Of a stretch of 64,000 nucleotides of DNA, positions 5,791 to 31,494 are shown piece by piece. The stretch is from Selaginella moellendorffii (lineage: Eukaryota; Plantae; Lycopodiophyta): contig NW_003314356.1 of NCBI RefSeq assembly GCF_000143415.4, positions 124,001-188,000 of the forward strand. The letters run 5' to 3'. The position numbers and the translations under genes are program-made. Each line of letters begins with the position of its first letter. Within the stretch, counting starts at the first letter, position 1. The notes below the pieces were generated by a model. The model had not been told where the DNA came from and did no database searches. It saw only the letters and a program-made list of their open reading frames with translations.

Positions 5791-8764
5791 AGCCAAGGTA
5801 GAGCTCCATTTCTGAGAGTTATGACACAACATTTAAGAACTTAACTGCAAATGTGGATTTCCGCACAAGGGTCAGATTTCTAAAAAGATACACTAACAAC
5901 AACCATCACATGTGAAGAAAAATTACACCATAATGAAGATAATCAGGCATCAGAAGGAGTGATTAGAAATGCAATTCATTCCCAGAAAACACCTATACAG
6001 GAGACATGTGAAATGGAAATTGAGACTACTCAACAAGAAGGTGACAAAATATAGCTTCTGAGATTTTAAGAAAAAAAAAGACAAATATTACCAAAAATAT
6101 GAATATCATAAAGTTCAAATTTTAAAAGATAAGCTTATATGCAGAGACTCTCAAAATCCTCTATTGATTTACCTCTGTTGCTACAGTAAACCATGAGCAC
6201 CATTCCAGTCAGATTGCTACAACAGGTAGCTTTTGATGCATACTTAGACAAAAGAAAGTAATTTTACATTGCAGATGATATTGCTAAGGGACTTGTGTCT
6301 AGCATCATTCAAAGTAAGCAAAATTAAAGTGACAGAAACATAAATATTGGATATTTCTTTCAGAGGATAAAGAGAATGAAATTGAAAATGAAGATGACAA
6401 AGAAACCTCTGATGAATCAGGTATGTAAAAGTAATTAAGTATTTTTCAAAATAGTTGACCACGTCTTTACTCTGCAGATACAGACTCAGTTTCTAACAAA
6501 ACAATGATAAATTTATCACAAGAGAAATTGAGACACATGGGGATTGATAAAGCAATTGAAATTCGTAATATTGATGAGAGTGCAAGTATGTTACTATTTG
6601 CGGGGTATACACTGAACAGTTATGGACTACGCATGAATACTGGACGAGTGGCAGGAAACCGACTACATGTTGACATGACAGATTTTACTGGCACTGAAAC
6701 TATTACAGTATGGATGTACTCTGATGTTGCAGAGAAAATATCTCAGCAGTTTGCAAGAGGAAAATGAATTAAATTGTTTGGATTTGAGGTAGTACCAATT
6801 GTACCCAAGTATGACAGAGGCACATGGAGATATTCCTTGAAAATCACAACTTCAACCATTATAGAAGAGTTTAACCACGAACCTCCACAGCTAAATCTTT
6901 TGGTACCAACAATGAGCATTGCTGAATTTAGCAAGTTACACAAGGGTCGTGAGTCAGTTGGCTCAGTCGAAGCTGTGATGATCAAAGCCACACAATTATT
7001 ACATAATAGTGCTGAAATCACAATTTCCGACAATGCAGATGCGGAAGGCTCACTGTCTGTAAGTAAAACAGACATGAAACTAGAAAAAAAAAAAAAAAAG
7101 AATTAAAACTGTGTGCATGTGAATGGCAGGTCAAATTTTTTGAAAGCAGCATGGATATTTTCAGGGAGATGTTGACAGAATTTCTGACTGGCATTGCACC
7201 AAATAGATGCTTCATCAATTTACAAGGTGATGGTATATTCAAGCGAGCAAATGTTTCTGGGATGACAATAGTCACACGAGTGGCAAGCAATTCTAAAAAT
7301 AAATATCTATCAGCGTTATATCGAGCAATTGGCACTAGCTGTACTGGGGTAAGTACACACAAAAATAACACAAAGCACTTCTTAATTGTTTTTAAACTTA
7401 ATTTATAGGTGCCTGGATGGTTCGAAATCGATAAGCTACGACCCGTGTTAATCCACACTGTCTGTAGTTCATGTAGCACGAGTGTTACACGGCAAATTGA
7501 TAAAGACACGGCTGCATGTTCTTCTTGCAATTATGTTGGTCCAGTAAAACAACTTCTATCGTTGAAAGGAATATTACACATGCAGGAGACAACCAAAAAT
7601 GTGAGCATTCCATCTTATATGTTGGATGTTTTATACAAGTTCAAGTCTCCATTTTTAACTTGCTGGAACAAAAACTCCACCAAAACAAAGAAGAAAATGA
7701 TAATGAATCCACCACATGGCAGTTTCTTATTGGGAGAATCTGATGATATAATAGCGTTTGCATCATCCACTCCAGTAAAACACATCCAGTGAGTCCATGA
7801 TCATTATACTTTCTGCTATCACAAGGTGTCTATGTAAAAGTACTGTGGTTGATTTATTAGCAAGCGATGAGCTTATGGATTATTGTGTTGTAAAGTCAAA
7901 ACTCATCAAATACAACATAAATCATAGAAACTATCATTGTACAATAGTTGAATGTTAACTGCACTTGTATACAATTAATTAAAAATGTGATTACAAACCA
8001 TATCCACTTCAAGGCTCTCATATGTAGGCCAAGGTCAAAACAGTCCATGATTGTAATGCAAACGAATGCTACTAGGAATTATTCGTTCACATGCATTATA
8101 CATCTCAAAGTCGTTTAGAGCTGAACCTGTTACAAATAAAATTAATAAAATGTACAGCCTAAGTAGTTCACCACAACACTTCTTTGAAGCTTGCATTCTT
8201 ATCAGTGGTGAGTGTCCTATTTAAGATAGAAATACACCCTAGAATAAATTAGCTGTTGAAGCCTGTCCCAGTATTGGCTGGGTTCTTCTGCAAATCCACA
8301 AAATAATTTTAAAATCAAAATCATTATTATTTATTAATGATTTATTATTAATTGATAATTATTTTGGATTAATGCACTGATTTTTTATTAGTTGATTATT
8401 ATTTTGGATTGATAATTTCTCTGTCACTGTATATGCATCCAAAATAATAATTGATTAATAAAAATACAATAATTATTATAAATATTTATAAATATATCTA
8501 ATTTTCTTGCTCAAGCTGGTCGTGAGAAAAAACAATAGCCATAGAAGGCACATCTTAGAATCAAAGCTGGTGAAGCTTAGTAGCAAACCTGGTAAAGCTG
8601 TAGAATACACAGATTGGAGTCAAAGTTGTAAGTCTTAGTAGCAATCTATAAAAATAAACATGCTAAGGGAAAGCAAAAAAGAAATAGTTTGAATAATTAC
8701 AACTACATCTTTTCAAATTGAAAATATTCTCTACTACTCCCAGCGGATCTGGGGCCCCTGCTAG
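5790..8764 (+). mobile_element. Helitron 3' portion (RPA-like cargo plus terminal hairpin and CTAG)
   Basis: Hairpin CCCAG-cggat-CTGGG at 8739-8753, CTAG at 8761-8764, then T. The 5' boundary is approximate. Confidence 0.7.
6478..7792 (+). pseudogene. RPA70-like multi-OB-fold ssDNA-binding protein, Helitron-borne; premature stop at about 6765
   Basis: VDMTDFTGTETITVWMYSDVAEKISQQF...FEVVP...YSLKITTSTIIEE resembles RPA70 DBD-A. The last exon has a CxxC-x13-CxxC Zn ribbon (CSSC...CSSC) as in DBD-C. Short GT-AG introns. About 1 kb upstream of a Helitron 3' end. Confidence 0.65.
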
Positions 8765-8880
8765 TGTTAGTGATAGTATATCAAACACTCATTTCATGAT
8801 CATATGAGCTACACTCCCATTTCTAAATCTTCTTTGGAGGAGCTCATCCCAAGTTAGCAACGTGGTGGAATATTTGCTAG

Positions 8881-9250
8881 TGATGTGGGCCAATGGGGGT
8901 GCCTTGGTATCAGAGCTCTGAAAGTTTAATATCCTGGTAATTTGTCACTATGGAGAGTGGCACAAAAAGGCATAATCAAAGTTTTAGCAAGATGTTGACT
9001 AGAGGTGCTATAAATCTGGAAGGGAGTTTGACTCTAGAGCCTCCAAATTAAGGATCTTGGAGGAGGTGTATAATCATTGATGAAGAATAAGCCAAAGAGG
9101 AGGCTGCGAAGGGATTCCACCCACTGTTTAAAGAATATTCATTGAGAGGAGCTTCAGTAGCATTTCTAGCAGCAAGAACCAGTGCACACCAATAACAATG
9201 GATTTGACAGTAGTAGAGTCAACCACAGGCTTGACTAGAGTGGCTTGACC
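8881..9250 (+). mobile_element. LTR-retrotransposon remnant: tRNA-iMet PBS and decayed gag start
   Basis: Perfect TGGTATCAGAGC at 8905-8916 followed by degenerate coding-like sequence. No intact LTR pair found. Confidence 0.45.
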
Positions 9251-9428
9251 CTTTCCAGACCTGAAAGTGCAGCAAGAAACAATGCAAGGCCGTCAAAGTC
9301 ATACATGCAAATACCAAGATTGGGCACTTGCAGTGCACAAACACATGCTTTATGGTGACTGTATGTCCTCCTACATGTTAAGAGGGCCTAAAAAAAGGCA
9401 AGGATGAGGGATTCCATCTACCTAAACC

Positions 9429-10440
9429 CTACTTCAAAGATGTAGTAAAGAGCATAACAATAGAAAGTTGAACTCCCTCTCCAAACCACACATCCTTAAT
9501 ACCACTATACTTTAGCGAGATGCACTTAATGCTCCACTTTATTTCTGGATCCACTTTTGCCAACTGTGGCATCCTAATAATGAGATTCATGTAATCGATT
9601 TTGTGAGATAAAAAGTCTCCACAATGTGGTTTTGCCAACCAACACTTCCAAGCTCTCTACACAAGCATCAAAATGCTGTGTAGGGGTAGCTGCACTTTCA
9701 ACTATATATAGAAGAACACCTCATATCACTATGTCATGCTCCTCATCAAACTTTGCTGAAACAAAGTTTTTATCACTTATTGTCTAGTAAAATCTGCACT
9801 GGACGGCCACAGAATACACCCTCCAGCATTAAAGTTGATGCATGAGTGTCCTCAACTGCCATCTTGTTTCACACACAATTGAGTCAATGATCAACAGTCA
9901 AAAGCCTCTTCCTCCAACCAAAATGATCTTCTTCATCATCCTCCCACTACAAAATCTTCAACTTTTTAATTTCTGACATACCGCATTAGAAGATTGACCA
10001 TTTGTCTTGCTCTGCTGCTTATTCTTTAGCTGTAGGCAATCAGCCTTGTAGTGCCAAGCTCACCACAATGATGACAATGTTGTCCACAAAGAACTTCTAT
10101 TTTTTTAACCATTCTTATTCAGAGTAGCCACTATAAACTTCAACTTGTAATGTTTGTTCTTGTCCTTGTATCCATGACAATCATCACTACAATTCTCAAT
10201 TAAAAATCTCCTTGAACACTTATGGGACTTGTGATTGTCATTGTCAAGTCAATAAGCCATATTAAAGAGCTCCTCTAAACTCTTTGTAGGTTGGGAATGA
10301 TGCAAGTGCTACCTCATGCTCTCACTGTGAATGCCATCAATGAAGTAGGACTTGTTCTGATTAGGATTAATTTTTATCTAAAGGACAACATATAACTTAT
10401 AACCACACTTCGTGCAAGATCTAACACTGTGAGATTAACA
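9429..10440 (-). mobile_element. Decayed gypsy gag-protease fragment, same family as 1-280 and 45740-46860
   Basis: ORF 9429-9638 (KVDPEIKWSIKCISLKYSGIKDVWFGEGVQ) closely matches ORF 5-637. A zinc-knuckle remnant lies near 10040-10080. Confidence 0.8.
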
Positions 10441-10696
10441 CCACCCTAGATTATTTTCCTTAAGCTGGTCCAGTGAGCTGGAGCAATACTATGAAACCAC
10501 TTGTAAAACGAAGAGACATATCAAGAAGTACATAAAAAAGAAGTATAGGGCATCTGCGCACTCTTTTCTCCATATAAAAGAGTGAGCAACTATTTCTTGT
10601 TTAAATAATGTCTAAATGGGCTAGTTTCATACTTTGATGAAAATATATACTCTTCAACCTCTTGTAGAAACCAGGATTAGCTTTGGGTTTTATATA

Positions 10697-14490: not shown

Positions 14491-14518
14491 TCCCAGCAGA
14501 GCTGGAATCCCTGCCAAT
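14491..14518 (+). mobile_element. Degenerate Helitron 3' terminus
   Basis: Hairpin CCAGC-aga-GCTGG, then aatccctgCCAA|T, with the same spacing as the CTAG ends elsewhere. Confidence 0.5.
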
Positions 14519-14989
14519 TACACCTCTACTTGCAGGTGATTGTGGTAACAGCTCATTGTCATTGGATAAATTTCTAGAAGACTTGCTAGCAGTGGGGAAG
14601 ATGCAAGGAGAGAATTAATGGCAACACTGCTATATTTCTTCTTTTTCCCCTCTTTCCATTTTTTTTTATAAACTGTGGCTTACCAACCTTAAAAAGGGAC
14701 AATCCCAGGATCTTTGCCAGTAATTCTTCCCCTCTTCTATATGGCAAGAGTGGATGCAAGTGCTTAGCACTCTTGTCTGACCTAAGACGACCTCCCTACA
14801 GTGCCTCGCCACCTTTCTCTTTGAACTTTTTCTTTGACAAGTCGCGAGCTTGCATCATGCACCTACAAAGTTACTGTGACTAACTTGTAACATCAAAAGC
14901 TGTAAATGACTATTAACACTTTTTTAGACATGGCTATCTCTTCTTTTATTTTCAGACTTACATGTTGTTCTGCTCCAAAGTATATATAA

Positions 14990-15190
14990 CAACATCTTTT
15001 CATTTTGAAAACTTTCTCTACTTTTCCCAGCGGAGCTGGGAGCCCTGTGAGTACTCCCTGGCATCTGGTGTCTTTCATTACATTTTTAGAATATTATTTA
15101 TGGATATATTTAAAATCTGATGGTTGATATTTAAAACAACAGCCTAGATTAAAACACATGGCATAAGGGTGTAAGTGGCAATAGCGAATG
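14990..15190 (+). mobile_element. Helitron 3' end fused directly to a Helitron 5' segment (head-to-tail junction at 15051/15052)
   Basis: 14990-15051 resembles 8704-8764 (hairpin TCCCAGC-gga-GCTGGGA, then gccctgTGAG|T). From 15052 (TACTCCC-TGGCATCTGG...CATTTTTAGAATATT) the sequence resembles 18374-18530. Confidence 0.6.
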
Positions 15191-16134: not shown

Positions 16135-18254
16135 TTATCTTTTTGCAAGGTCGCACATTAGCTTGAGGTGTCTGACTTTCTGATGTTGCATACTCTCGAA
16201 AGTACCATAGTCTTCAATCAAGGTGTCCATGATACCTGTTACATATAAAGAAGAAAAAACTAAAATTAAGCTAACAGCTAGCTACCTGAGCAGACATCAA
16301 ACATTCCAAAATCCATGTATTCCGTATAGTGATGGATATACACCCGTTTTCTAAACAACATGTTGAACGAGTGTTTCATAGCTAACAGCCGATTCCTGAA
16401 AGATCTTGACACTAGGTATATAGATTCTGGTTGTAGATACCTGATACAAGTGTTATTTGCAAGGCATACAAGGGACAGGGGTATTCCAGAAGCGGGCTGA
16501 TGACAAACACCAACTTTAAAACCGCCAGTATTCCAGTGAATCTGTGAAATAGGAGTAAAAAGTTAGTACACAAAATTCAAATATACGAAACCATGTTTAG
16601 ACGTTGGCTTGATCGGACAATATTCTCATTTACATCCGAAATGCTACACGGTGTCCCTCTTAACAGAAATGCGCAATTAAAATATACAGATTCCAAAGGG
16701 TTAGATTTTATAAGATAATTGTCTTTTGAGAGAGCATCACTGAAAAGCTGAACAATGACAGACAGGATCAGTCATCATATACAATCCGAATTACAAAGAC
16801 CTGATTAACGAGCTTTGTGTGCTGGTTGGGATGCCAGGGTAATTTCCCTAAATAATTAAATTTAGCACGAAATTCGAAGAGCGTTGGGTTACCTTTAGGT
16901 GTAAAAAGTGCCATGCTTGATATGAGGTAATGTAAACGCGGATAGGGTATTAGATTTGTAGTAATTTCGTTCAAATCGACTGTCAAATACGAATTATACA
17001 AAATTGCAAAGAAATGCCAGGCATATTGCACCGTTAAGCTGGCCCTCAAAACGCATAGAACTGGTTAGATTCAAAAGCAGTGAAGAGACTAAAGCATTCA
17101 TTGCGTCGAAAGGCGCCTTATTCCTTCCTTCTTCAGATGATTGACATTTATGTTGGCCTTTTTTTCTGTTAAAGTCACAGTTACAATGAATTATTTTGAG
17201 CATGAAATCTGGAACCTAAGTATGTCTATAAGAGCCTGGTTTTCAATTGGAAAAACACAATCCGCATGTTGAGTGAGGGATCCAATAGATAGAACACTAA
17301 ATTAGGATGCAAAGTTTAGCATTTAATGAGCCTTTAAAGGTACCTGTTATAAGGCGATGTAATAACGTCGTCATCTGTGGATGGGAAAAGAGATGCAGAA
17401 AATCTAAAAACTTTCGGATAAGCATCCTATGCGGCATTCGTTAATACTTGTAAAAGATGTTATCGATGCAATTACATGCAAAAGTTCCAGAATGTAGCTT
17501 CCAAGACCAGAACCAGTTCCTCCTCCAAGTGAATGCAAGAGAAAAAAACCCTGCAATGAACTGCAAATCTCTGCCTGGGGAAAACGTTGTTTGAGGTTCA
17601 TATTTCTTTTGTACCTCACGGCGTACTTTTTCGATAATAGTATCCGAGTACTTTGGACCGTAAAAGTTATGTCCATGAGCCCTTCACGGCAGCAAACAAT
17701 GATTGTGGTTACGAATTCTCATTGATAATTATACCAGTTGTTTCCGGAGCCAGAGATATCAGTGATAAGCTGTGTTGAATTGAACAACTCGGATAAATTG
17801 CCCTAAAGAATATTTTAAATTTTAGAAGAAAAATTTGTATGCAGACCCTTAAAAGCTGATTCACAACTCCTTCTTCCATATCCACTAAGACTGCCCTGGC
17901 CTACAAAAACAGATGTAAGGAAAGGAGAGACTATGGAGTATAACTTTTAAGGTAAATATCGGATGAGTCCCATCCCCAACTGGAAGGTTGATAGGAGGAC
18001 AAAAGCGAGCATCTACATTGTGGAAGTAGCTGAAGCACAAGGAGTTTGTTACGTATAATGATAATCACAATACCTGCTTAAAGAATCGTCAAACCACCCA
18101 TTTGAATTACAGGCAGCGTGCTCCTTGAGTGCCATTTCCCAAAATTTGTATCCAAGCTGTGCTAAAAATACTCCACATTAAACGAAAGAGGATTGGGTAG
18201 AAGAACCTGATTGCCGCATTGTCCACATTGGATGGTGATAACCTCTCTTGGCAT
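16135..18254 (-). CDS. TUBE1: Epsilon-tubulin; multi-exon
   Basis: Starts [16 protein letters not shown], then [78 protein letters not shown]. The N-terminus and the DMEEGV motif are epsilon-type. Confidence 0.92.
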
Positions 18255-18596
18255 TATCTTTTACCCTAATTAGGTGGACCAATGGGATATGTGGAAATTG
18301 CCACATCAGAATGAAAAGGGCAAAAGGGGCAAGAGGCTCTGCGTCGTTTAGAATTTGAAACTTCAAATCATCTTACTCCCTTATTTAAACGTGCTATTGG
18401 CATATGGCATCTGGCATCTTTTATTCCATTTTTAGAATATTTTTTCTGAATATACTTATAATTTAACGGTTCAAATTCAAAAACGTCAAATAGATGGCAT
18501 AGATCAAGTGCCAAAGGGGTGGCAACGCTTCAACTTTGAATTGAATGACCTTCCAAATCAAGTGAATTTTTAGGACGTTCAGGCAGATTGTAAGCT

Positions 18597-18600
<4 letters not shown>

Positions 18601-18676
<76 letters not shown>
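18601..18676 (+). repeat. (TC)38 microsatellite
   Basis: Uninterrupted TC run upstream of the kelch fragment. Confidence 0.98.
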
Positions 18677-18678
<2 letters not shown>

Positions 18679-18864
18679 GTGGCACTGGCTTCATTCATTC
18701 ATAGTAAATTCATATACTATTTCACTCTCTTGCTTCTTCCCTATTCTCTTTCGAGGCTTAAAGTTCCGGTTTGCTCGAGGCTGGAACCACATTGAGAGTG
18801 ATTCCTATTTTGCAGCGCTATAAACCCTGTAGTCTCTCTTTTACACTTGTATTTTAGGGTAAAG

Positions 18865-20520
18865 ATGAAGTGGGCGCCTCGTCGATCCAGCGATCAGCTC
18901 CAGCAGCAGCAGCCGGGGTGCAAATGGGGCCACACCTGCAATGCGGTCAGGAATCTCATCTACATTTTCGGTGGCTATGGCCGGGACGAGTGCCAGACCA
19001 ACGATGTTCACGTCTTCGACATTGGTATAAGTTTTCTCTTCTGGGTTTTCTGGAAAATATGGTTTTGATCATGTTTTTGGTGGGATCGCGCAGGGACATA
19101 CACCTGGAGCAAGCCTGTGATGAAAGGAATGCACCCTTCTCCTCGGGACAGCCACAGCTCCACGGCCGTCGGGTCTAAGCTCTATGTGTTTGGTGGTACC
19201 AATGGAACCAGCCCGCTCGACGATCTCTTTGTTTTGGATACTGGTAAGCTCCGAGTTTTATCTATTTTTTTTTCTTGTTTTTATCAACAATGCAGCTACC
19301 AACACCTGGGGGAAACCCGACGTTTTTGGTGATGTTCCTGCTCTGAGAGAAGGACATAGCGTGTCTCTCATTGGTGACAACCTGTTCGTGTTTGGGAGAT
19401 GAGGGAAATCCAGTGATCCCTCAGAGGAGGAGTACTACAACGACCTCCATGTTTTGAACACGAGTAATATCCTGTTATCTTTCCTTGTTTTCTTCTAAAT
19501 TTTTTTTTTCCCTATAGATACTTTGTCTGGAAGAAGATTTCTACCACTGGAGTCTTGCCTATTCCTCGGGATAGCCATACCTGCTCTTCCTATAAGAACT
19601 GTTTCGTTGTCATGGGTGGCAAGGACGGTGGTAATGCCTATCTAAACGACGTTCATATTCTGGACACAGGTATATACATTGTGCTGGTTTTAAACTTGCG
19701 AATTCATTTGCGTTTCCAGAAACAATGGCATGGCGGGAGGTAAAGACGACTGGTGCCGAGCTGATGCCAAGAGCCAGGCACACAACAATCAGCCATGGAA
19801 AGTATCTTGTCGTGTTTGGAGGATTCTCCGATGATCGCAAGCTATTCAATGACGTCCATACTCTCGACTTAAGTATGTGCACTTGTAGGTAGATTTGTTT
19901 CCTGTTGGTCTCTCATGGGGCTTTTACGTATTTTGTAGCGACTGGTGTTTGGGCGACTTCGAATCCCTCTGGTCCTGGGCCTTCTCCACGTTTCTCCCTT
20001 GCAGGAGATTCTGTGAACGCAGAGCGAGGCATATTATTCTTCTATGGGGGATGAGAGCTTGAAGCTCTGGATGATATGTATTTTCTCGGCACAGGTTGGC
20101 TTCTTCTTTTATTGACATTGCTGCCATTCTTGACAATATGGTTGCCGTTTTTCTGTGAAGAGATGCTGAGGGAGAAAGATCCATCAGAACCAAAGCTATC
20201 CATGCGTAAGGAACTTAAGAGAAGGCGGCAAGAGTATCATGCCACGCCATTTATGCTAGACAAGCAACGGGATGTGGACAAGAGCTTGGTTTCGTCTCAC
20301 GGAGGTATCTGTGGAAAACCTTGGACCTCTCCAATTTTTACCTGTCAAACTCATGCTACAGAGTTTCAAGCTCATGTTCAGCCGCTAGGCGAGAAGATGT
20401 TTGAGGCTAGAGTAAGCGATGTATTCAACTAGAAGCCTCCATTGATGGGAAGCTCTTCCGTGGGCTGCTCTTTTCGTACAAGCCTGGCTTTGCTCAGGCA
20501 GTGCAATCTTACATGGCGAG
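18865..20520 (+). pseudogene. Kelch-repeat (galactose oxidase/kelch) protein fragment with introns and nonsense codons
   Basis: Repeats KWGHTC..YIFGGYG, PRDSHS..YVFGG, REGHS..FVFG, PRDSHTC..VMGG, PRARHT..VFGG. Stops at about 19400 and about 20430. Confidence 0.85.
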
Positions 20521-20736
20521 GTTTGTTTCGTTTGATCCTCAGTTACTCTCTAAAGCCACTTATTTTTGTTCTCTACCTACCCACTTTATTCCTATTGTGC
20601 AGAACTACTATAGCAGAGACCCCAATTCTGCTGGAATATAAATTGATACCAGAGCATTGATGAGCATCCTGCAGCTCAGTCAGAACTTTTTTTTTTGTCA
20701 AGGATATTTCACCTTATGATATGTTTAACTTTGCAG

Positions 20737-20905
20737 GTTGAGCTTGATTCCGAAGGAGCACATATGTACAATGCTGCTGTTGCTCTTCACGACACTATGA
20801 TCGAGCTTGAGGTCGCAATAGAAGGTGGAAAGGACAGCTTGTCAATGGCTGCTCAAGCAGGTGGTGAAACTGTCAAGGCACCTGGGAATCTCGTCATTAG
20901 TACAC
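20737..20905 (+). pseudogene. Phosphoribosylformylglycinamidine synthase (PurL/PUR4) single-exon fragment
   Basis: LDSEGAHMYNAAVALHDTMIELEVAIEGGKDSLSMAA...VKAPGNLVIS; GGKDSLSM is the PurL signature. Confidence 0.85.
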
Positions 20906-20960
20906 CAAACAGCTCTCTTTTCTTCTCGTGAGCGTACATTCTTCCTTTTTTCTTTCAAAA

Positions 20961-21860
20961 GGTACTCCAACACTAGAGCATACAGTCAATCCAAGCTCGC
21001 GAACATCTTCCACGCCAAAGAACTGGCAATGAGATTCAAGGTATTAGTCAATGCTTTCTCTTTCGCTGATTAGGCCGAAGGAGTTGACATCACAGCCAAT
21101 GCTGTTCATCCAGGGTTCATAGTGACACCTTTGACGCAGTGCACACTCTACATAATGAGCTTGTCTCTTTGCCTCGTTTGTTTGCCTCAATGAAAGGAGG
21201 TAAGGTTTTACTCTGATATTAGGATGTTGATGATACATAATCTTTTTTTCCTAAGAAAATAATATATCAGAAAATTTAACTATGGTCCATAGATTGATTT
21301 AATAATAATAAAAGCTTAGGTGATGATGAATCATATTTTTTAAGATGGTAGCCTTTTGTATTGTGTTTAATGTTGTCTCAATCATATTTTTACCTTTACA
21401 CCATTGTATTTATTTTTATATTTTCATGTATCAATGCACAAAAAGATTACTCTTAAAAACAGTATTATAACTTTATGATATCACACAAATCTTAAACTAT
21501 ATCTACTTTGATGCCATACACACCCTACATAATGAGTTTGTTTTTGGTTACTTATGGAACTTTGATCTTCATGCAGGGGTTCTCAAGTTCTTCTCCAGCT
21601 TCCTTTGGAAAAATGTGCCACAGATAAGAAGAATTCTCCCAATAATCTGGAAGTTTTTCGTGACTAATATGTGATTGATCTCTCAGGGCGCTGCTACGAC
21701 GTGCTACGCGGCTTTACATCCAAGCCTCAAGGACGTCACTGGGCAATACTTCGTGGATTCCAACAAATCCAACTGTAGCGCTTATGGCAGAGATCCTGAG
21801 CTTGCTCACAAGCTATGGACCTTCTCCCAGGACTTTATAGATAAGCATTCTCCATCCTAA
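20961..21860 (+). pseudogene. Short-chain dehydrogenase (Tic32/RDH-like), C-terminal exons only
   Basis: AYSQSKLANIFHAKEL, ITANAVHPG, QGAATTCYAALHP...GQYFVDSN. The N-terminal Rossmann half is absent. Confidence 0.85.
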
Positions 21861-21984
21861 AGGTAAAAGGTTGATGGTGCTAGAGAGCGAGCAAGCAAAC
21901 CAGGACAACTCAGCAATGATTTGTGGATAGACTGTATTTACTCTTCTCAAAAGCTCGAGCTCGAGCTTGAACAAAAGTAAGATG

Positions 21985-22905
21985 CGTTGCCTACATTGCA
22001 CATGACTAAAACTTTGGTTTCGAGCATGTCGTCCATCACATACTTGACACCCTCTCGTTGGATTCCAGAGTCTTTGATCCCACTGTATGGCTGGCTATCA
22101 ACGCACATGCTTGGCGAATTGTTGAGGCAAACTCCTCCAGCCTGTGAGGATCAAATAATTATCAAACAGTCGATCAATACTTTCTATATCTCAAACGCAA
22201 AGCTACCTCTATATGCTCAAACGCATAGAAGGCCTTGTTTTGATCACACATAAAGATGCCAGCTTGGAGTCCGTAATGCGTGCTGTTAGCTTCCATCACG
22301 GCTTCCTTGAAATCACTGCGTCACCACCGTTTAAGTTTAGAGAAAAGAAAAGGAAGTAAAGAAGAACTTCGGGAGCTAAGAAACTTTGAGAGCTGACTTG
22401 TATGAGTAGAGAAGGATCACAGGACTAAAAATCTCTTCCTTCCTTGTGTCCGTGTCAAAGGGAGCGTCTTCCAGGATCATTGGCTCCATGAAAGCTCCCC
22501 TTCGCTTACCACCAACTAAAAGTTTGGTGCCTGCCTTCACTGCCTCGTTCACACTCTTCTCCACTGTAGCTGCTGAAGACTCAGATATCATGGGCCTGAT
22601 TGACGTGTCATCTTGGCGAGGATCTCCACCTTTGAGTTTCTTAACGGCAGCGATCAATGCATCGTTCACCTACACAACCAGCACCAAATACGTAGATCAA
22701 AGCTCGATTTGAGAACAAAGAATATGATAGAATTTAAAGACAAGTGTTGGATACCTCACCTTTCACCTAAAGACGCTGCATGTGAATGCACAACTGGCCG
22801 CTCTGATAGAATCCCTCATGGATCAACCTAGCGATTGTACCTTCCAAGTGTGGAACGAGATCTTCCACTAAGCATGGAGCATTGCCTCCAGCTCCATAAC
22901 CACCT
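21985..22905 (-). pseudogene. Aldehyde dehydrogenase (ALDH21-like) C-terminal fragment
   Basis: ELEAMLH/GGNAP-like region, FYQSGQ, GDP...PMISE, EEIFSPV, YGLQAGIF, YSGIKDSGIQREGVKY. Frameshifts present and no N-terminus. The subfamily call is less certain than the ALDH call. Confidence 0.75.
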
Positions 22906-25339
22906 GTAACAGGAATCAAAGAAGTTGAAGAAAGCGAAGCTCCATCCGAAGGAAGATATAATAAAATATCATTATATTTTAGTATCTTTATAAGTATGAA
23001 TAATTTTCTAAAACAATTTTAGTCTTCAAGATTAGCATTTTCGACAACATCCATCTTACAACTGATATATATCCCAGCTGAAAATATGTTTCTTTTTTAA
23101 TAATTTTCTTTAAAAAAAGTTTTTATATTTTATGTAGATAATGGTATTCTATAGTATTTAATAAAGCCAAAAATTTCTTCAGTTATAAGGAAGCAGTTGT
23201 TCTTGCAATAAAAAATATATTTTAGTTATTCATGTATATAGTTGTATGTTAGATCTAATGCTAGAGCAAGATCAAAAGACTTATGTAAACCATATGTTTT
23301 AACTATAGAAGATAAATCATTTCGTCAATATTGAGACAAAAGATAAAACTCATGTAAAGCTGCTGGTAGATTTAAGTAAGATTATGAGCAAGAAGACTCA
23401 TTAAAAATATAAAAGATTTTGCTTAATTTTGAGATATTATTAAGATATGGATTTGATATTTGTATGTGTATGAGATATCTCATACCATATTAGATACCAT
23501 GTCATATAGTAGACATGAATGCATAGTTTTATCATGAAGCATTAGTACAGGTTTGTCCTAATACAAATATTATATCTCTAATGCAATTATTATCTTTCGA
23601 TGAAGATAAAAGAGAATATTAGTTTAAGAAGATCTATAAAGTTTCTCTTATGTAGAATTTTCTTGAAATAGTTTTTCTATCTTTGGATGGATGGTAAAAC
23701 TAGTGCATTGATATTTTATTTTATGTTTCCTTATCTTCCGTGATTTGTCATTGTAAGTATTATTTCTACAACAGCACAGAGGAGCCCAAAAAGTTGTTTA
23801 TCTATGATATAAGAACATAAACCTCTTAGTATATAAGGAGAAAGGTAAACAAGAAATACAACCTTAGCTCCTTTATACATGCAAAACTAAAGCAAAAACT
23901 TTGACACAATTAACAGCAAAATGCAAATTAAAAACACTTGATGCTATATACTTATATTTAATTTACTCCACACTACAGTTTTAAAATAACTTAAAACTGC
24001 TCTATGAAGTATATAAAATGTATAGACAAATTAATAATTGTCTATCATTAAAATAAACTACTCATTGCTATCTCTTATAGCATGATATCCAGATGACAAA
24101 TATTCCAAACCATCTTAAGTTCCACCAACTAATAAATCATAATGATATAACAAATGCATGATGCAATGAATATAGATGGTAGTAAATTCTTGAAAAAATT
24201 AACCTTGTATGCATTTAAAATAGTAAGTTTGCCAACCAAGATATATTTCCAGTAGAGTTGGGATCCTTGCTATGGCAAGAGAGCATGGGTCTCAGGAGAG
24301 TTATGGTTATTAGCTTTCATTCATGAGGGTGTAAACTTACAGAAAAAAGTATGGTGGATTATATGCAACAAAAAAGAACAACTTGAAAGATAATATATAG
24401 AAAATTAAATATAAATGGAAAGGATTTTTAAATAAAAAAGCACATTTTATTCTAATTGGTTAAGGGTATTAGGATACTTGGGGGGGTTAAATATCTTAGG
24501 GTTTGAGTAGGATGAACTCCCAAAATGTTGAAATTCAAATAAAACAAAACTTTCAGCTTCATATATATATAAATTGTATAAAGAATCTTACAATCTATTG
24601 TGTTGCAAAGAACTATTATGCATTATTTGGATTTTGTGACTTTATATTTTCTTAATATATCTAGAACCATTCTCCATTGCTGGCTTATGAGGTTTAATAT
24701 AAATGTGGTAGCAAGCTAAATATATTTATTTATGTATGTATAAATGTAAAACCAGACATATAATAGAAATTTTATTATTCTTTAGTAAATTATGAATGTT
24801 AGAGGCATAACTCAATATGCAATTAAAGTTATAATTTCTCCAAACTAAACTGTTATTTTTTGGTAATCTATGATTCTTTGGTTTTGTGAAAACTCAATTT
24901 CTTTTAAAGCATGGCAGAAATTTGTATATGTGTTTAGGGTTGTGCACCTTTTTATAAAGGCAATAAAAACATCTAATTCAAATTTAATAATGATAAAAAA
25001 TGATCTTACTTCCCCAACACACATTATTATCTATTTATATTATTGTACATTTCTCTGGATATGAATACTAAAAAATTTTAGTTAAATTTAACTTTATATA
25101 TAATAAAATTTTCTAATATTGTAAAATTAGAAAAGAAGAATTATTTATCTTGGCTATGTTATATCTCCCAGCAGAGCTGGGGTCTGTGCTAGTCCTTCTA
25201 TATTTAAAAGAGTAAGGGTGACATATTCAATTGAGATTCTTTTCAAGGTTAATGGTGGAGATGAAAACACATGGCAAAAAAACAGTTGAGGGTGAAACGT
25301 TTTTTTTTATAGTTTTTTTCAATGCATTTTTCCAGAAGA

Positions 25340-25850
25340 GCTTATCACCGCGGCTGCACACCATGAGGTTCGTTGCATGATTGCATTGGTTCTTACGTTA
25401 TATACTTTGTGCTCATGAATCTTTCCTTTACTGTCCAGTTTGTACTCAAAGATGCCGTCAAAGAGACCTCTGGCTTCCCACGGCACTTGTGGAATCGTGA
25501 ACAGACCATCTGATCACAATAGTGTGATGTCCAAAGGCTGCCAGACACTCAAGATTTCCACCCAGATCAACTTGAAAAGCATTCTACCATTCAGCCGGAG
25601 CACCTATATAATACACTTGTAAGTCTGTGAAAGCAGTTTACTGGATCTCTGAAATGTCCTCTCTGCACCAAACAAGATAAGCCACTCTACGTTTACTTCA
25701 TTCTCCTGTATATCTGATAGCTCAGATCTCCATGGAACAGAACAGGCAGCTCCTCCCTGAAAGTCTTGATGGCATAGCCTACATTGACATGGTAATCCAG
25801 ACTTCCTTCCTTGCTCTTTGCTACTAACAGATCCTCTACTTTGCTATTCA
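25340..25850 (-). pseudogene. DUF2358 (NTF2-like) gene fragment
   Basis: DYHVNVGYAIKTFREELPVLF...YQIY, EDISFRDP-like, WQP, VPWEARGLFDG..EYKLDSKGKIHEHKV; disrupted. Confidence 0.7.
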
Positions 25851-28679
25851 GCTTGGTCGAGAGATTGCAATAATGCACTTGAAGAGGTTGCTTGAATCTA
25901 TCTCTGCTGCTATATGCCAAGCTCGGCACTACCTCTAACGGAAGCAGCTCACTACACCATCTTGTCAAGTTCGCTGCAAACTGAATATTGTCTTCCTCAG
26001 TCAAGCTGATTTCTTCCAGTTCTTCATGCCAAACAATGGTATGGCACTCTTAAGTTTGAGGTAAAAAGCTTTCACATTTTGTTTGTCAAGCTACCTTGGT
26101 TGACTTGCACAGGCTTAACCTCAGCGAGTCCATCTATCCACTGGCAAGTTCTCAGTGTTGAGAATAGCGAGCCAAGTGGCAGTGACTGAAGAGGTGAGTT
26201 TTCTATTTTTTATGCTTTTAGCTCCCTGGCAAACATCTGTATTCTCTTTTCTTCTTCTCTAGATTACTGACAACCTTGCTTGGAATGTATTGCAGTCATA
26301 CACATTGGAGATTAAGTTTCTTGAAGCTCTCTGATGCTTCAAACAAAAGGCAAGCACTGCCACCGTCAAGCATACATGACAATTGGCTTCAAGAAGATGA
26401 TGGCTAGGTTTATGAGTTTTGCAATTGTCAATTTTGCAACTGTTCTTGGCTCTTCTGTATCTGCCAAGTGAGTATTTCTGAGATATGACTCGATTTCTGA
26501 TGTTGAAGCATGTGAAGCTTTATGCAGTTTTGGTCAGAGTCTAGAACAATGCACTGGATCTTTGCACAGAAACACAGGAAACATTCAAAATAACCCAGCA
26601 CTTGAGGTGATATGCTCATTAACGTTTGTGATTTGTTTATCTCGAGGCATCTTTTTTAGGCACTTTGAGCATTGACTTACACAGGAACTTTCATTGGTGG
26701 GGGCAACGATTCTAGCAAAGAAGGCTCTGGAAGAAGCTTATATTACGAAGCAGATGATCTGTTTTCAGACCTCTTGAAAGATGAAAATGAAGGCTCAGCA
26801 TTAACAAGAAGTGACTATATCGCTTTTAAGGTTACAAAGGTCCATCTTGCAGGAACATCATTGGTTGTATCCTGGAATGAAGGCTACGTTGGAAGCAGCA
26901 ATGGGGTACATAATTTATCCCACAGCTTTTGCAAGTCTATTTCGACGTTGCATTGCAAGATATGAGCGATTGTAAGTTCCAAACCTTTGCATTTAATCTG
27001 CTGCTCTTTGTATGTTTAGCACTACTCTGCACTCTTTTACCTATGATCTTCTTCAGAATCAATGCCATGTTTCCGGATAAGGCATTTTCAATTGAGGTAA
27101 GCAAGATTAGTTTACTCATAAGCTGACTCATGTCTTAAATCAGGTCCAACAAACGTGTTGTCAGTTTGTGCACACTTTCTTCAAGAAATCTCCTCAATTC
27201 ATTGCTCTTTGAAGGTAAGCCTTTCTTCTCTATTTGAAGTTGTTATCCCAAAAGAAGTAAAAACATTGCAGAAGCCCATCACCAGTCAACCTCAAACAAG
27301 TGACAGTAAAGTAAGATGGATTTCACAATGTTTGAGTGTTAAACTTCTATTACATTTACGAGACTGAGCTTCCTTTGCAACTATGTTGAGTGGTTGGAGA
27401 CCAGGGGGTGGTGGTACTTGTTTCAAGGATGGTGTAAGAGAGCTCTTTGAAACTCTGGAGTTGGTTCTCTACAAAAACCTCTTCTTATGGTAATCGAAGT
27501 TTCTCACTGTTTATGTTGTGTCTAATCTTCACAAACATCCAGGCATAAAACTTCTGCCATCCCGGACCAGTCCCGGCTGCTATTTTTTGTCATAACCGCC
27601 ATAGCAAAGCTTGCAACGTGCCATTGAGAGCTCTTGCCTAGAGCTTGAGTGCTAAGGTTTGTTTTTTTTTTTTGTCTTCTCTAAGAAACTTTCTTGAGTT
27701 TAAGTTGCTGTTCTTGATGAAGGTGGCACAATCACATCAACTACTCAAAAAGACTGTCTGGAGAAGAATTGAAGATCACCATTGCTGCCTACGACTGAGT
27801 CCCTGGAGTGGAGAAGCTGGTGATGAATGCAAAGATGGACCTTGCCTTGCAGCTTATACAGCATGAGAAGCCCGAGAGCTTGCTACATTACTACAAGGCC
27901 ATGGAGCTGTCCACAAAGTTCGATTTGTTTCTCACATGTCCAAGAAGATTTGGCCCCCTGTCGATCACAACATGGTCAGATGCTACCAGCATTTTGGACA
28001 AATATTCACAGGGTTATACTTCCCACCAAAGGNNNNNNNNNNNNNNNNNNNNNNNNNNNNNNNNNNNNNNNNNNNNNNNNNNNNNNNNNNNNNNNNNNNN
28101 NNNNNNNNNNNNNNNNNNNNNNNNNNNNNNNNNNNNNNNNNNNNNNNNNNNNNNNNNNNNNNNNNNNNNNNNNNNNNNNNNNNNNNNNNNNNNNNNNNNN
28201 NNNNNNNNNNNNNNNNNNNNNNNNNNNNNNNNNNNNNNNNNNNNNNNNNNNNNNNNNNNNNNNNNNNNNNNNNNNNNNNNNNNNNNNNNNNNNNNNNNNN
28301 NNNNNNNNNNNNNNNNNNNNNNNNNNNNNNNNNNNNNNNNNNNNNNNNNNNNNNNNNNNNNNNNNNNNNNNNNNNNNNNNNNNNNNNNNNNNNNNNNNNN
28401 NNNNNNNNNNNNNNNNNNNNNNNNNNNNNNNNNNNNNNNNNNNNNNNNNNNNNCAATTCTCTAGTGGATCTCTGTGAGCTTCTTCTGGATCTGCTTCGCC
28501 CCACTGTGCCAAACCACTTATAACCTTTTGGAGTAGATTGTAAATCAGCTATTTACAAACATTTTTAATTCATTAATTATTTTATTAATATTATTATTGA
28601 ATTAAATAATTATAATTAAATATTAAATTAGCTGATTCTGCTAATTTACAATCTATCCACTCAAAACCTTTATGATACA

Positions 28680-29090
28680 CATGCTGCAATGCGAACAATA
28701 CTCAGCCAAGGACATTCAACCATTCCCCACTTGGAGCATGTCAGGATCTGAAAGAGAGAAGCTTGAGAAATTTATGCAAAGCCAACCATTGATCTCACTG
28801 TTCCACCCTTTGGGATGCCCACAAATTGTTGGCGTCCGCTAGCAACTCTATACTGCAAGCAAAACTGGTCATAGAAGGGAAAAAGAAGAAGAGCTAAGAG
28901 AACTTTACCATGGCTATCTGTCTTTAGTGATGTCTGTCAGCTAGCTATTCACATACTTCCCAGCCCACATGGTTGGATGATCTGCTCCCCTATGCACAGA
29001 AACATGAGCTCTTATATCGCAAGAGATAGCAACAAAAAAAATTTAATTACCATTCACACATTACATAGAAGATAGGATGTTTGCTTTTGT
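28680..29090 (-). pseudogene. Alpha-galactosidase (GH27) internal fragment, four small exons
   Basis: Minus-strand peptides HPIFYVMCEW, GADHPTMWAGKYVNS*, LADANNLWAS and DPDMLQVGNG*MSLAEY match the GH27 motifs RPIFFSLCEW / DPATWA..GNSW / DPDMLEVGNG. Confidence 0.78.
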
Positions 29091-30159
29091 TGAGAGCCTC
29101 ACTCACTGGGTTTTGTGGTGGTGTTGCTCCATTTCTGAGATGCAAACATTGTTTGCATACTGAGCATGAGAAGGCTGATTTTTCTTGTGAAATCAATTTT
29201 CATACTTGAGATAGTCGGTTCCCTATATGAGAAGAAATAACTCAATTGACATGTTGAAATGGAACAAAATCAGCATGTTTACTGTACTTGTGTCTTGAAA
29301 CTCGTGGCTCTTTGAAGCCACTCAATGGCATTTATAAGTCGTTCTCCTGGAAAACATCTACAAATGATAAGTTGTTCATTGGAAAAAAGAACTCTCTACC
29401 TTCCAGTAAATTTCACCAGATCATTACCTGTACTTTTGAGATCCACATTGAGACCTTTCAGCTTTCCTATCACTACCGCATCCTTGATCCCTGTATGGAA
29501 AAAAAATGTTTTCTATTCTACATCTTCTTCCACAATTGTACAACTGACCTCTTCCAGAATAAGATGTGAAGCTGGCTATATATATAGATATAACATTATA
29601 ATTTGGCCCCCGGGAGATTTGGCCCCCCGTCGATCACAACATGGTCAGATGCTACCAGCATTTTGGACAAATATTCACAGGTTATACTTCCCACCAAAGG
29701 ATCAACTACAAGAAAATAAGTTCAAGAAAAACAAAGAGCAAAGTCACAAGGATCTGGCTCACCCAGCAATGCACAAATCAAAACAAAACTTTGGAAATTG
29801 TAAGAGCTGGACTTTAATTTTCCTTGAGAGTTTTCAAGAATATCTGTCCACTAGGATGAATGTTGCAGTGATAGATTCACGTTTTAAACACCACCTACAT
29901 TTTCCAACAAGAGATAAGATCTTTGAATTCTTCATCCTTTCCACATTATCTTGAGAGGCTTTAATGGATAATTGCTGGGGAGGCTAATGTTGACCTTAGA
30001 AAGGGATCCTATGAGATCAAGAAGAATTTCTTCAAAATTGAGAATTGAGCTAAGAAATTCCATACATGCAAGTAAACCCAGAAGAAAAAGAATGGTCAAG
30101 ATGGCTTGTGAGCCAAGGAAATGGCAATCTCCCTAACCAAGGTTTAACCAAGTTTACAT

Positions 30160-30345
30160 TGCTGAGTTCACACCCCATTGATCAAAGAAGTATATGTATG
30201 AATTTGTATATGATAAATGTATCTGTAGTTGATTCCCCAGATAAATCCCTGCACCACGACCCAGTGATCATACAAAGATAGAAGATGGCCAACTGTATAT
30301 GGCTTTAGAGTTGGTAGCAGCATGCTCAAGGCTGGATGGTTGCTG
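30160..30345 (-). pseudogene. Cytosolic glucose-6-phosphate isomerase C-terminal fragment
   Basis: [39 protein letters not shown] plus a next exon DQWGV; compare GNRPS..LL...GQLL..YEH...QG..WGINSFDQWGVE. Confidence 0.8.
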
Positions 30346-31494
30346 GTGAATTCTTGCAGACTTTCACCTAGCATGCTAGGTAACTATAGAGCAGCAAGGA
30401 AAGAACATTCAGAAACTTACTTTGTGAGGAGTCAAATAATCCAGAACACCTTCTGCTCGAAGTTCCTCAAGGATCTGAAGAAAGAAACATTTAGACCATG
30501 AAAGAATACAAGAGATTCCTTACTGACCCTGCCATCTTGCAAGTTATACATAAAAGATTTTGATTAGAATCCTTTCTATAATTTTAAATTTCTATAATAA
30601 CTTCCTATACAGTGATAATAATTGCAACAATATGGGATATGAGAGACCATCTGCTTATATTACTTTTGTTACCAATAAAAGAAAGGGTATATACAAAGAC
30701 AATGTTCCATTGTCATAAAAAGTATTTGTGGATATTGATGATCTCCAAGGTATAACTATCAATCTCTACACTAAAATGACATTATGAATTTCAGACAAAC
30801 AATTTGAAAAATATACATCATCACTACTGGATGATGAAAACAAACAACTAATTCTTTAGGATTCATGTCACCTATGTAACAGATGTCCTATCTATTCCAG
30901 CGGAGCTGGATTTCTTGCTAGTTATCTTTAAACGGAATACAAAGCCTTTAGATCTAAATAAATGTTTGTAGAAAATTAATAGAGCGACCAGAGTTTGCTC
31001 AGTGCAGCGTTATTGAATCTTTTCCATTTTAGAGTGCATTGAGAAAGAAAAATAGGCTTCTATGTTGAAAGCTGTTGGACTACCATCTTTGTAGCTGCCC
31101 AATTATTGTCCTTGTACTGTATGTCTTTAACAGTTCCATTCAAGGTTGTCTCGCTGGCAAGGTAGGAGAAGATTTTAAGGTGCCATTTATTATTTAATCG
31201 GTCCACAATCTACATCCATTGGAGGAGTGATAAAAGCCATGTCCATATCAAGAAGGAGAACAAGATGGATACCTTAACTCTAAAGACACAACATGACATT
31301 CTCTATTGCTTGAGTGTTGATAGAAAATACATGGTGTTATTCGTTTGGTTTGCTCATTTATTGTTCAAAGATTGATCCTTCTTGAATTTTGTCCATTTTT
31401 TAACTGAATTTCCCAAACCGAGAACATATTGCATCTTTTCGGTTCAAGGAAAAGGCGTGTTCATTCTTTTAGCAAACAATATACAAATGATTAC

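What the first reader, a model, noticed from the sequence alone, without database searches (positions are those of the whole stretch)
8739..30921. Helitron family forming same-strand, head-to-tail trains that ferry host gene fragments
Seen: one terminator (CCAGCrGAkCTGG hairpin, 7-8 nt spacer, CTAG|T) recurs at 8739-8764, 25167-25192 and 30896-30921, with degenerate copies at 14493-14517 and 15025-15051, all on the + strand. At 25192/25193 a TC-starting 5'-like end follows CTAG directly, and at 15051/15052 a homolog of the 18371 5' end follows directly. Known: Helitrons start TC, end CTRR after a hairpin, make no TSD and capture gene pieces. Inference: a lineage-specific exon-shuffling family that inserts at, or reads through, its own termini. 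This would explain the apparent 'genes' from 18.8 to 35 kb.
Basis: partly seen in the sequence, partly recalled or inferred. Interest (0 to 1): 0.75.

Follow-up and report, generated by a model that had tools for sequence, protein, structure and literature searches.

The report
Decayed Helitron ends framing gene-fragment mosaic
In this spikemoss (Selaginella moellendorffii) window a short hairpin-plus-CTAG signal typical of the tail of rolling-circle jumping genes (Helitrons) recurs five times on one strand, and the "genes" beside it are broken, many-copy scraps of host genes, a pattern well known from maize and seen elsewhere in this genome.

Summary
The motif is real: 5 copies, all on the + strand, all within 8.7-30.9 kb; 0 expected by chance. 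Three are intact (5-6 bp hairpin, 7-nt spacer, CTAG then T) and two have lost CTAG.

The genome is Selaginella moellendorffii.

The "genes" at 18.8-22.9 kb are a mosaic of amplified host pieces:
- a Kelch copy with two in-frame stops (9 other models on 7 scaffolds, several chimeric);
- a FGAM-synthase exon (11 models);
- the C-terminal half of an SDR oxidoreductase;
- the C-terminal half of an aldehyde dehydrogenase (21 models, none reaching N-terminal of residue 231).

A DUF2358 end and one PGI exon lie further on. This fits decayed non-autonomous Helitrons carrying captured fragments.

Not shown:
- No 5' end is secure. The 15052/18371 repeat carries a TIR-like 13-mer and may be a small TIR element.
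- There is no RepHel partner and no empty site.
- The tubulin gene at 16.1-18.25 kb looks like an ordinary host gene.
- Continuity across the gap is untestable.

The scan has reported Helitron stacks, CTAG|TAC junctions and fragment mosaics on other DNA of this genome before. This is a new member of a known kind, of moderate interest.

The parts
8698..8765 (+). Terminus copy T1. It is a 67-nt block shared with 14985-15051, ending in a hairpin (CCCAG/CTGGG, 5-nt loop), a 7-nt spacer and CTAG, followed by T.
14491..14518 (+). Degenerate terminus copy T2. It keeps a 5-bp hairpin but ends CCAA instead of CTAG, followed by T.
14985..15052 (+). Degenerate terminus copy T3, of the same subfamily as T1 (82.5% identity). 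It has a 7-bp hairpin and ends TGAG instead of CTAG, followed by T.
15052..15175 (+). Copy a of the short repeat that directly follows T3. It starts TACTCCCT and ends with an inverted 12/13 match to the 13-mer at 18372. It is either a Helitron 5' end entered 3 nt from its tip or a small TIR element.
16138..18250 (-). Tubulin-family gene (epsilon-tubulin-like by my reading), with exons colinear and open. It is probably an ordinary host gene and not cargo.
   Evidence: Pfam Tubulin positions 102-140 and 163-189, and Tubulin_C positions 27-84 and 81-119, lie in order on the - strand. The N-terminal exons rest on reading only, with weak PDB support.
18371..18528 (+). Copy b of the short repeat. 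A|TC lies at 18370/18371, then TTACTCCCTTAT, then the 78-nt match.
18865..20557 (+). Kelch-propeller pseudogene copy. It covers the gene from the start codon to the exon ending ...SYMAR and has two in-frame stops inside exons, near 19400 and 20055. It is one of at least 10 Selaginella copies, several of them chimeric.
20653..20925 (+). Fragment of FGAM synthase (PurL), one exon. It is present in 11 Selaginella gene models on 9 contigs.
   Evidence: Pfam PF22689 positions 97-157 of 160
20940..21860 (+). C-terminal half of a short-chain dehydrogenase/oxidoreductase. The same FGAMS+SDR order is found at another locus (P0172).
   Evidence: NCBIfam PRK06196/PRK06197 positions 142-196 and 251-314 of about 320
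21974..22889 (-). C-terminal half (residues about 231-461 of 462) of an aldehyde dehydrogenase, 4 exons with introns. The N-terminal half is absent from the window. 21 Selaginella models carry the same half.
22890..25165 (.). AT-rich stretch (33-35% GC) with no recognised coding, lying between the ALDH piece and terminus T4.
25166..25193 (+). Terminus copy T4, intact: 6-bp hairpin, 7-nt spacer, CTAG, followed by TC.
25322..26049 (-). DUF2358-like gene piece or pieces. The C-terminal end is matched; completeness is not established.
   Evidence: Pfam PF10184 positions 83-113 of 113, E 1e-4 and below the family cutoff; reading
28033..28453 (.). Assembly gap. The 87 nt before it (27946-28032) recur at 29615-29700 (98%).
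30171..30383 (-). Isolated exon of phosphoglucose isomerase.
   Evidence: Pfam PF00342 positions 405-448 of 486, E 1e-10
30895..30922 (+). Terminus copy T5, intact: 6-bp hairpin whose outer pair is T-A instead of C-G, 7-nt spacer, CTAG, followed by T.

Best explanation
The five motif copies are 3' ends of one old family of non-autonomous Helitrons in Selaginella moellendorffii, clustered on one strand. Three are intact and two have decayed.

A Helitron is copied as a single strand, starting at its 5' TC end. Copying stops when the transposase meets the subterminal hairpin and CTAG. When that stop is missed, or when elements nest, host DNA or further termini are carried along.

The stretch that ends at 25192 carries such cargo:
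- a Kelch pseudogene;
- a FGAM-synthase exon;
- half an SDR gene;
- half an ALDH gene.

Each of these exists in many diverged copies across the genome.

Shown: the motif and its anatomy; the fragment and pseudogene state of the cargo; its many copies and chimeras.

Inferred: that the motif is the terminus of the unit that amplified this cargo; where the 5' ends lie; and how the cluster arose (nesting, read-through or insertion next to resident copies). The elements here are dead and would have been moved in trans.
For: Motif:
- 5 copies against 0 expected, all + strand, all within 22 kb.
- Hairpin, 7-nt spacer, CTAG and T in three copies. The hairpin is kept in all five, with one compensatory outer pair.
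- The 8698-8760 / 14985-15047 homology ends at the terminus.
- No TIRs around the mosaic. No Rfam family or tRNA covers the motif.

Cargo:
- ALDH: only residues about 231-461 are present, with no N-terminal half in the window. 21 Selaginella models on 17 contigs share the same N-terminal limit.
- FGAMS exon: in 11 models.
- SDR: C-terminal half only. The FGAMS+SDR order is repeated at the P0172 locus.
- Kelch: two in-frame stops relative to P0180. Nine other models lie on seven scaffolds, fused to Amidohydro_3, FGAMS or another 5' partner.
- Introns are retained in the pieces, so capture was at the DNA level.

Established knowledge:
- The hairpin acts as the terminator, and read-through captures flanking DNA (PMC4778049).
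- Maize Helitrons capture fragments stepwise, and some carry several 3' termini whose inner CTAG may be mutated (PMC3288121).
Against: - No 5' end is secure. The 15052/18371 repeat has a TIR-like inverted 13-mer whose only match with 1 mismatch or fewer in the window sits at the far end of the other copy. That suggests a small TIR element rather than a Helitron 5' end.
- There is no RepHel or P-loop helicase in the window, no empty site and no second genomic copy of the motif.
- Only 28-67 nt are conserved and the hairpin is short (-4 to -7 kcal/mol; z -0.7 to -2.2).
- Five of five copies on one strand has p = 0.06 on its own.
- The cargo pieces point both ways, and a seemingly intact tubulin gene sits inside the supposed train.
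- Copy counts may be inflated up to twofold, because the assembly holds both haplotypes.
Confidence: 0.6

Rival explanations
1. An active, self-targeting Helitron family inserts at, or a few bases inside, the 5' tip of resident copies. That builds gapless head-to-tail trains: 14518-15051, 15052-?, 18371-25192, 25193-30921, 30922-?.
For: - T3 abuts TACTCCCT, which at 18371 is preceded by A|TCT, so the junction lies 3 nt inside a TC-starting end.
- T4 is followed by TC.
- The flanks after T4 and T5 share a TTTAAA(C/A)G word with the 18371 region (p about 0.04 each).
- All termini lie on one strand.
- Notes from other windows of this genome describe the same CTAG|TAC junctions. Those are leads, not evidence.
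Against: - No 3' terminus is found at 18370, so 15052-18370 is not a closed element. It contains a seemingly intact host tubulin gene.
- The 5' repeat has a TIR-like inverted end.
- The flanks after T1 and T2 show no likeness to the 18371 region (p 0.87).
- The displaced TCT expected upstream of the inserted element is not seen at 14515-14518.
- The gap at 28033-28453 breaks the 25193-30921 unit.
Confidence: 0.2
2. The gene-fragment mosaic was amplified by something other than a Helitron: a Pack-MULE, CACTA or other cut-and-paste element, or dispersed segmental duplication. On this view the hairpin-CTAG motif is the conserved piece of an unrelated short repeat that happens to lie nearby.
For: - No DNA-level link between motif and cargo could be made.
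- The motif lies 2.3 kb from the nearest cargo piece (ALDH), across AT-rich DNA with no recognised coding.
- Other transposons are present in the window: DUF7869 transposase-like ORF and gypsy elements.
Against: - No TIRs of 16 nt or more with good complementarity frame the mosaic.
- The motif has every sequence feature of a Helitron 3' end, and homology stops at it.
- Copies of the pieces are dispersed over 17, 9 and 7 contigs, with many different chimeric partners. That fits transposition with stepwise capture better than segmental duplication.
Confidence: 0.2
3. The motif is not a mobile-element end at all. It would be a short conserved coding word (it reads L/I-P-A-E-L-G-x-L in one frame, which is LRR-like), a regulatory hairpin, or chance.
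For: - The 14491-14518 copy lies in a 78-codon open frame that ends at a GT.
- The LRR likeness is my reading only.
Against: - 0 copies are expected by chance.
- There is no Pfam hit for the open frame and no repeat of the 24-residue LRR period.
- CTAG gives a stop in one frame.
- The flanks are unrelated and AT-rich.
- No RNA family matches.
Confidence: 0.04

Closest known systems
Maize non-autonomous Helitrons with stepwise-captured gene fragments and multiple 3' termini (Dong et al. 2011, PMC3288121)
   Same: - Hairpin-CTAG 3' ends.
- Stacked pieces of unrelated host genes that keep their introns.
- Many diverged copies with different chimeric partners.
- Several same-strand 3' termini in one stretch, with the inner CTAG mutated.
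   Different: - The host is a lycophyte.
- The 5' ends are not established here, and no autonomous partner has been identified.
- One cargo item is a nearly whole gene (Kelch, from the start codon onward) rather than a short scrap.
- The link between terminus and cargo is inferred, not shown by copy alignment.
Helraiser / Helibat read-through capture (Grabundzija et al. 2016, PMC4778049)
   Same: - The subterminal hairpin close to CTAG acts as the stop signal.
- Missed stops give 3' transduction and new 3' ends.
- Precise CTAG-TC head-to-tail junctions arise as circle intermediates.
   Different: - That system is experimentally shown in a bat element. Here nothing is shown functionally.
- The hairpin here is shorter.
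- The head-to-tail junctions here are genomic and imperfect (TGAG|TAC; CTAG|TC).
Pack-MULEs and other fragment-carrying cut-and-paste transposons (for example PMC5861414, PMC1947982)
   Same: They amplify chimeric, intron-containing pieces of host genes and produce many pseudo-gene models.
   Different: They are bounded by long TIRs and a TSD. No such repeats frame the mosaic here.
Helitron stacks reported by this scan on other pieces of the same genome (s1-382107, s1-421248, s1-349000, s1-392328)
   Same: - Same genome.
- Hairpin-CTAG ends on one strand.
- A CTAG|TAC-type junction 3 nt inside a TC-starting end.
- Mosaics of host fragments.
   Different: - Those are unchecked AI notes on other DNA.
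- The terminus sequence family here was not compared with theirs.
- Here only one such junction exists, and it has a rival reading as a TIR element.

Membership tests
Helitron (canonical, Helitron1-type) | 3' end CTRR preceded within about 10-12 nt by a short GC-rich hairpin | tested here: met
   Three copies have a 5-6 bp stem, a 7-nt spacer and CTAG. Two copies keep the hairpin but have lost CTAG.
Helitron (canonical, Helitron1-type) | 5' end starting with TC, conserved among copies | tested here: inconclusive
   A|TC lies at 18370/18371, with a homologue starting 3 nt further in at 15052. That repeat also has a TIR-like inverted 13-mer. TC at 25193 has only weak extra likeness.
Helitron (canonical, Helitron1-type) | Insertion between host A and T without a target-site duplication | not testable with these tools
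   T follows all five termini and A precedes 18371.
Helitron (canonical, Helitron1-type) | No terminal inverted repeats | tested here: met
   No convincing inverted pair frames 18-31.5 kb. The best pairs are 30 nt at 80% complementarity and lie at unrelated places.
Helitron (canonical, Helitron1-type) | Homology among copies stops exactly at the terminus | tested here: met
   8698-8760 against 14985-15047 ends 4 nt before the end of the motif. The flanks beyond it are unrelated. Only one pair of copies was available.
Helitron (canonical, Helitron1-type) | An autonomous RepHel-encoding element shares the termini | not testable with these tools
   There is no RepHel or Walker-A helicase ORF in the window. 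My guess of an RPA70-like gene upstream of T1 found no support. The rest of the genome could not be searched.
Helitron (canonical, Helitron1-type) | Carries captured, intron-containing host gene fragments that are multi-copy | tested here: met
   Kelch pseudogene, FGAMS exon, SDR half and ALDH half, present in 9, 11 and 21 other Selaginella gene models. The physical link to the terminus is not shown.
Pack-MULE / CACTA-type fragment carriers | Long TIRs and a TSD bounding the fragment mosaic | tested here: not met
Small TIR element (MITE), for the 78-nt repeat only | Terminal inverted repeats at both ends of the repeated unit, with a target duplication | tested here: inconclusive
   The 13-mer at 18372 has a 12/13 inverted match at 15163-15175, the far end of copy a. 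It is the only hit with 1 mismatch or fewer in 64 kb. TA flanks both ends in copy a. Copy b lacks a clean 3' arm.

The most novel reading that the evidence does not exclude
The family, like the others noted by the scan in this genome, preferentially lands a few bases inside the 5' tip of resident Helitrons. Same-strand, gapless trains would then grow by self-targeting. The TGAG|TAC junction at 15051/15052, which lies 3 nt inside A|TCT-TAC, would be one such event.
Probability: 0.2. Interest if true: 0.6.

Novelty: new member of a known kind. Interest (0 to 1): 0.38.

Why it matters
It shows that many short "hypothetical protein" and "NADP-dependent GAPDH / FGAR-AT / kelch" gene models of Selaginella moellendorffii are not genes. 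They are amplified scraps carried by transposons, which matters for gene counts and gene-family analyses in this reference lycophyte.

It also adds a lycophyte example of Helitron-style stepwise fragment capture, best known from maize.

If the self-targeting reading held, it would give a testable target-choice rule for Helitron transposases.

Tried and rejected
1. An RPA70-like Helitron accessory gene at 6.2-7.8 kb, upstream of T1 (my guess from the OB-like and Cys4 look). Pfam, PDB, Atlas and the 5.8-billion-protein search gave nothing, and AF2 gave pLDDT 39. Dropped.
2. A coding or LRR reading of the motif. No support.
3. TIR-bounded carriers. No TIRs.
4. Fetching paralogous or allelic Selaginella loci with the look-up of encoding contigs.
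5. The search of earlier findings by sequence.
6. A metagenome scan for the motif. One 1.7-kb contig came back with no homology beyond 15 nt, so it is a chance hit.
7. A general scan for other hairpin-CTRR ends. It found only the three known copies plus a few unrelated hits inside the 48-58 kb repeats.
8. Motif peptides in the 297 fetched proteins. None.
9. Literature on Selaginella Helitrons. Nothing specific is in the library.
10. Spliced models. The completeness of the tubulin and DUF2358 genes therefore rests on exon-wise evidence only.

Full report
OBSERVATION

The pattern CCAGCRGAKCTGG-N6-10-CTAG matches at 8740-8764, 25168-25192 and 30897-30921, all on the + strand, against 0 matches in shuffles. 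A 28-nt consensus with up to three mismatches finds exactly five sites, all +: 8738-8765, 14491-14518, 15025-15052, 25166-25193 and 30895-30922. The 13-nt core with one mismatch finds the same five and nothing else on either strand of the 64 kb.

In the alignment the conserved part is about 28 nt, and T follows in all five copies. The copies at 14517 and 15051 end CCAA and TGAG instead of CTAG. Each copy folds into a 5-7 bp stem with a 3-5 nt loop, at -4 to -7 kcal/mol. The 30921 copy has T-A where the others have C-G in the outer pair, which is one compensatory change.

The copies at 8764 and 15051 share 63 nt upstream (82.5%), and that homology stops within 4 nt of the end of the motif. No Rfam family and no tRNA covers any of this.

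THE GAP

The window has Ns at 28033-28453. The 87 nt before the gap recur at 29615-29700 (98%). Nothing else is shared between the two sides, and no gene piece spans the gap. Continuity is therefore unknown. Nothing below depends on it, except that '25193-30921 is one element' cannot be tested.

ORGANISM

A 97-residue ALDH exon (22379-22669, - strand) finds best relatives that are all Selaginella moellendorffii models: XP_024523564.1, EFJ09699.1, EFJ04399.1, EFJ12235.1, EFJ04517.1 and EFJ04521.1. This agrees with what earlier notes of the scan say about this genome.

WHAT THE 'GENES' ARE

Exons were searched one by one by reference. I built no joined spliced protein.

ALDH. Full-length relatives (for example the 462-residue P0005) align to the window only from residue about 231-234 to 461, on the - strand at 22889-21974, as four exons with introns. 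No full-length ALDH query finds any N-terminal half in the window. Twenty-one Selaginella gene models on 17 contigs carry this same C-terminal half at 56-96% identity. None reaches N-terminal of residue 231, and six start exactly there. That pattern points to one capture followed by amplification.

FGAM synthase. 20653-20925 (+) is one exon of FGAM synthase (PF22689 positions 97-157 of 160). It is present in 11 Selaginella models on 9 contigs.

SDR. 20940-21860 (+) is the C-terminal half of an SDR oxidoreductase (NCBIfam PRK06196/PRK06197 positions 142-196 and 251-314 of about 320). Model P0172 from another scaffold has the FGAMS and SDR pieces in the same order at about 90% identity. The SDR stop and the end of the ALDH piece lie tail to tail about 115 nt apart. 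They may therefore be one captured host segment; this is inference.

Kelch. The Kelch copy at 18865-20557 (+) covers the gene from the start codon to the exon ending ...SYMAR. Measured against the Selaginella model P0180 it has two in-frame stops inside exons, near 19400 and near 20055. Nine other Selaginella Kelch models lie on seven scaffolds. Several are chimeric: with Amidohydro_3 (P0181, P0183), with the FGAMS exon (P0173), or with a different 5' partner (P0184, P0218).

Sister contig. P0001, P0173 and P0184 all lie on one 68,368-bp contig. That contig is a 95-100% (amino-acid) sister of this region but has an extra FGAMS exon next to the ALDH exon.

Further along. There is a DUF2358 C-terminal end (25322-25513, -; E 1e-4, below the family cutoff) and one isolated PGI exon (30171-30383, -; positions 405-448 of 486). 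31-35 kb gave no domain.

Tubulin, by contrast. The tubulin-family gene on the - strand (about 18250-16138) is colinear and open. Pfam gives Tubulin positions 102-140 and 163-189 and Tubulin_C positions 27-84 and 81-119, in order. The N-terminal exons and the epsilon-tubulin likeness are my reading only, with weak PDB support. It looks like an ordinary host gene.

WHAT KIND OF ELEMENT

The pieces keep their introns, so they were copied as DNA. They are dispersed and recombined with many partners, which fits a transposon that captures host DNA stepwise.

No inverted repeats frame the mosaic, which speaks against Pack-MULE or CACTA carriers.

The recurring motif has the anatomy of a canonical Helitron 3' end. 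In the Helraiser system such a hairpin is the stop signal, and missing it gives read-through capture (PMC4778049). In maize, Helitrons capture fragments stepwise, and some carry several 3' termini whose inner CTAG may be mutated (PMC3288121). That matches the two decayed copies at 14517 and 15051 lying upstream of intact ones.

I therefore read the region as a cluster of old, dead, non-autonomous Helitrons or a composite of them. The stretch ending at 25192 carries the Kelch-FGAMS-SDR-ALDH mosaic.

WHAT IS NOT SHOWN

There is no RepHel or P-loop helicase in the window. My guess that 6.2-7.8 kb is a Helitron RPA70-like gene found no support.

I could therefore not align paralogous copies, look for empty sites, or tie the motif to the amplified cargo. 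The motif lies 2.3 kb from the nearest cargo piece (the ALDH half), across AT-rich DNA.

THE 5' ENDS AND THE 'TRAIN'

The 8-mer TACTCCCT occurs only at 15052, directly after the decayed terminus, and at 18374, where it is preceded by A|TCT. A 78-nt match at 81% follows in both, after a 24-nt indel. This fits a Helitron end entered 3 nt from its tip, as notes on other windows describe.

However, the 13-mer at 18372 has its only match with 1 mismatch or fewer in the whole window, in inverted orientation, at 15163-15175. That is the far end of the other copy, with TA on both sides there. This looks like the two ends of a small TIR element. Copy b lacks a clean second arm, so the point stays open.

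The flanks after 25192 and 30921 resemble the 18371 region only weakly (p about 0.04 each). Those after 8764 and 14517 do not resemble it at all. No 3' terminus lies at 18370.

What is solid is the clustering: five related ends in 22 kb, none in the other 42 kb, all on one strand. Nesting, read-through composites and insertion next to resident copies all remain possible.

VERDICT

This is a new member of a known kind. The scan has already reported Helitron stacks and fragment mosaics on other DNA of this genome.

A practical by-product is that dozens of annotated Selaginella 'genes' of the ALDH, FGAR-AT and kelch kinds are amplified fragments.

Noticed in passing
window 3227-3790 (-) and 4749-5840 (-): There is a DUF7869 transposase-like domain (E 1.8e-39) next to a 364-codon open frame with no Pfam hit. 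This is probably part of a DNA transposon, and it lies between gypsy sequence and the orphan gene-like stretch.
   Followed up: partly
window 6200-7800 (+): A multi-exon, gene-like stretch with canonical splice sites and an in-frame TGA at 6765. The last exon has no homologue in Pfam, PDB, the Atlas or the 5.8-billion-protein search, and folds poorly (pLDDT 39).
   Followed up: yes
window 1-4200 (+), 36000-39100 (+), 9412-10367 (-), 46055-46855: Ty3/gypsy pol ORFs, plus inverted fragments of the same or related elements: 1-296 against 9705-9412, and 9538-10367 against 46855-46055.
   Followed up: no
window 48332-49478 and 54460-55592: A direct repeat about 6.1 kb apart (300 nt at 99% and 108 nt at 97%). 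It could be an LTR pair or a recent tandem duplication.
   Followed up: no
window 56200-56820, 62070-62680, 63170-63820: Three related arrays with a 12-nt period. In some frames they translate to Ser/Asp or Leu/Gly low-complexity runs.
   Followed up: no
window 40190-45230 (-): A multi-exon leucine-rich-repeat gene, interrupted by two 100-N gaps at 42345-42444 and 45362-45461.
   Followed up: no
window 22669-22900, against the 68,368-bp contig holding P0001/P0173/P0184: The sister contig has a FGAMS exon, nearly identical to that of P0160 on a 4.1-Mb scaffold, directly upstream of the ALDH exon on the same strand. The window lacks it. This may be a recent insertion difference between sister copies.
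   Followed up: partly
window 8728-8737 and 15015-15024: Directly in front of the hairpin, the T1 and T3 blocks read TCTCTACTAC and TCTCTACTTT. From my memory this resembles the usual plant Helitron 5' start. It is preceded by T, not A, so I did not take it for an end.
   Followed up: partly
Selaginella proteins P0181 and P0183 (other scaffolds): Kelch copies fused to an Amidohydro_3 piece. These are a different chimeric series of the same Kelch gene. Together with notes on Kelch chimeras elsewhere in the genome, they suggest this Kelch gene is a frequent cargo.
   Followed up: no
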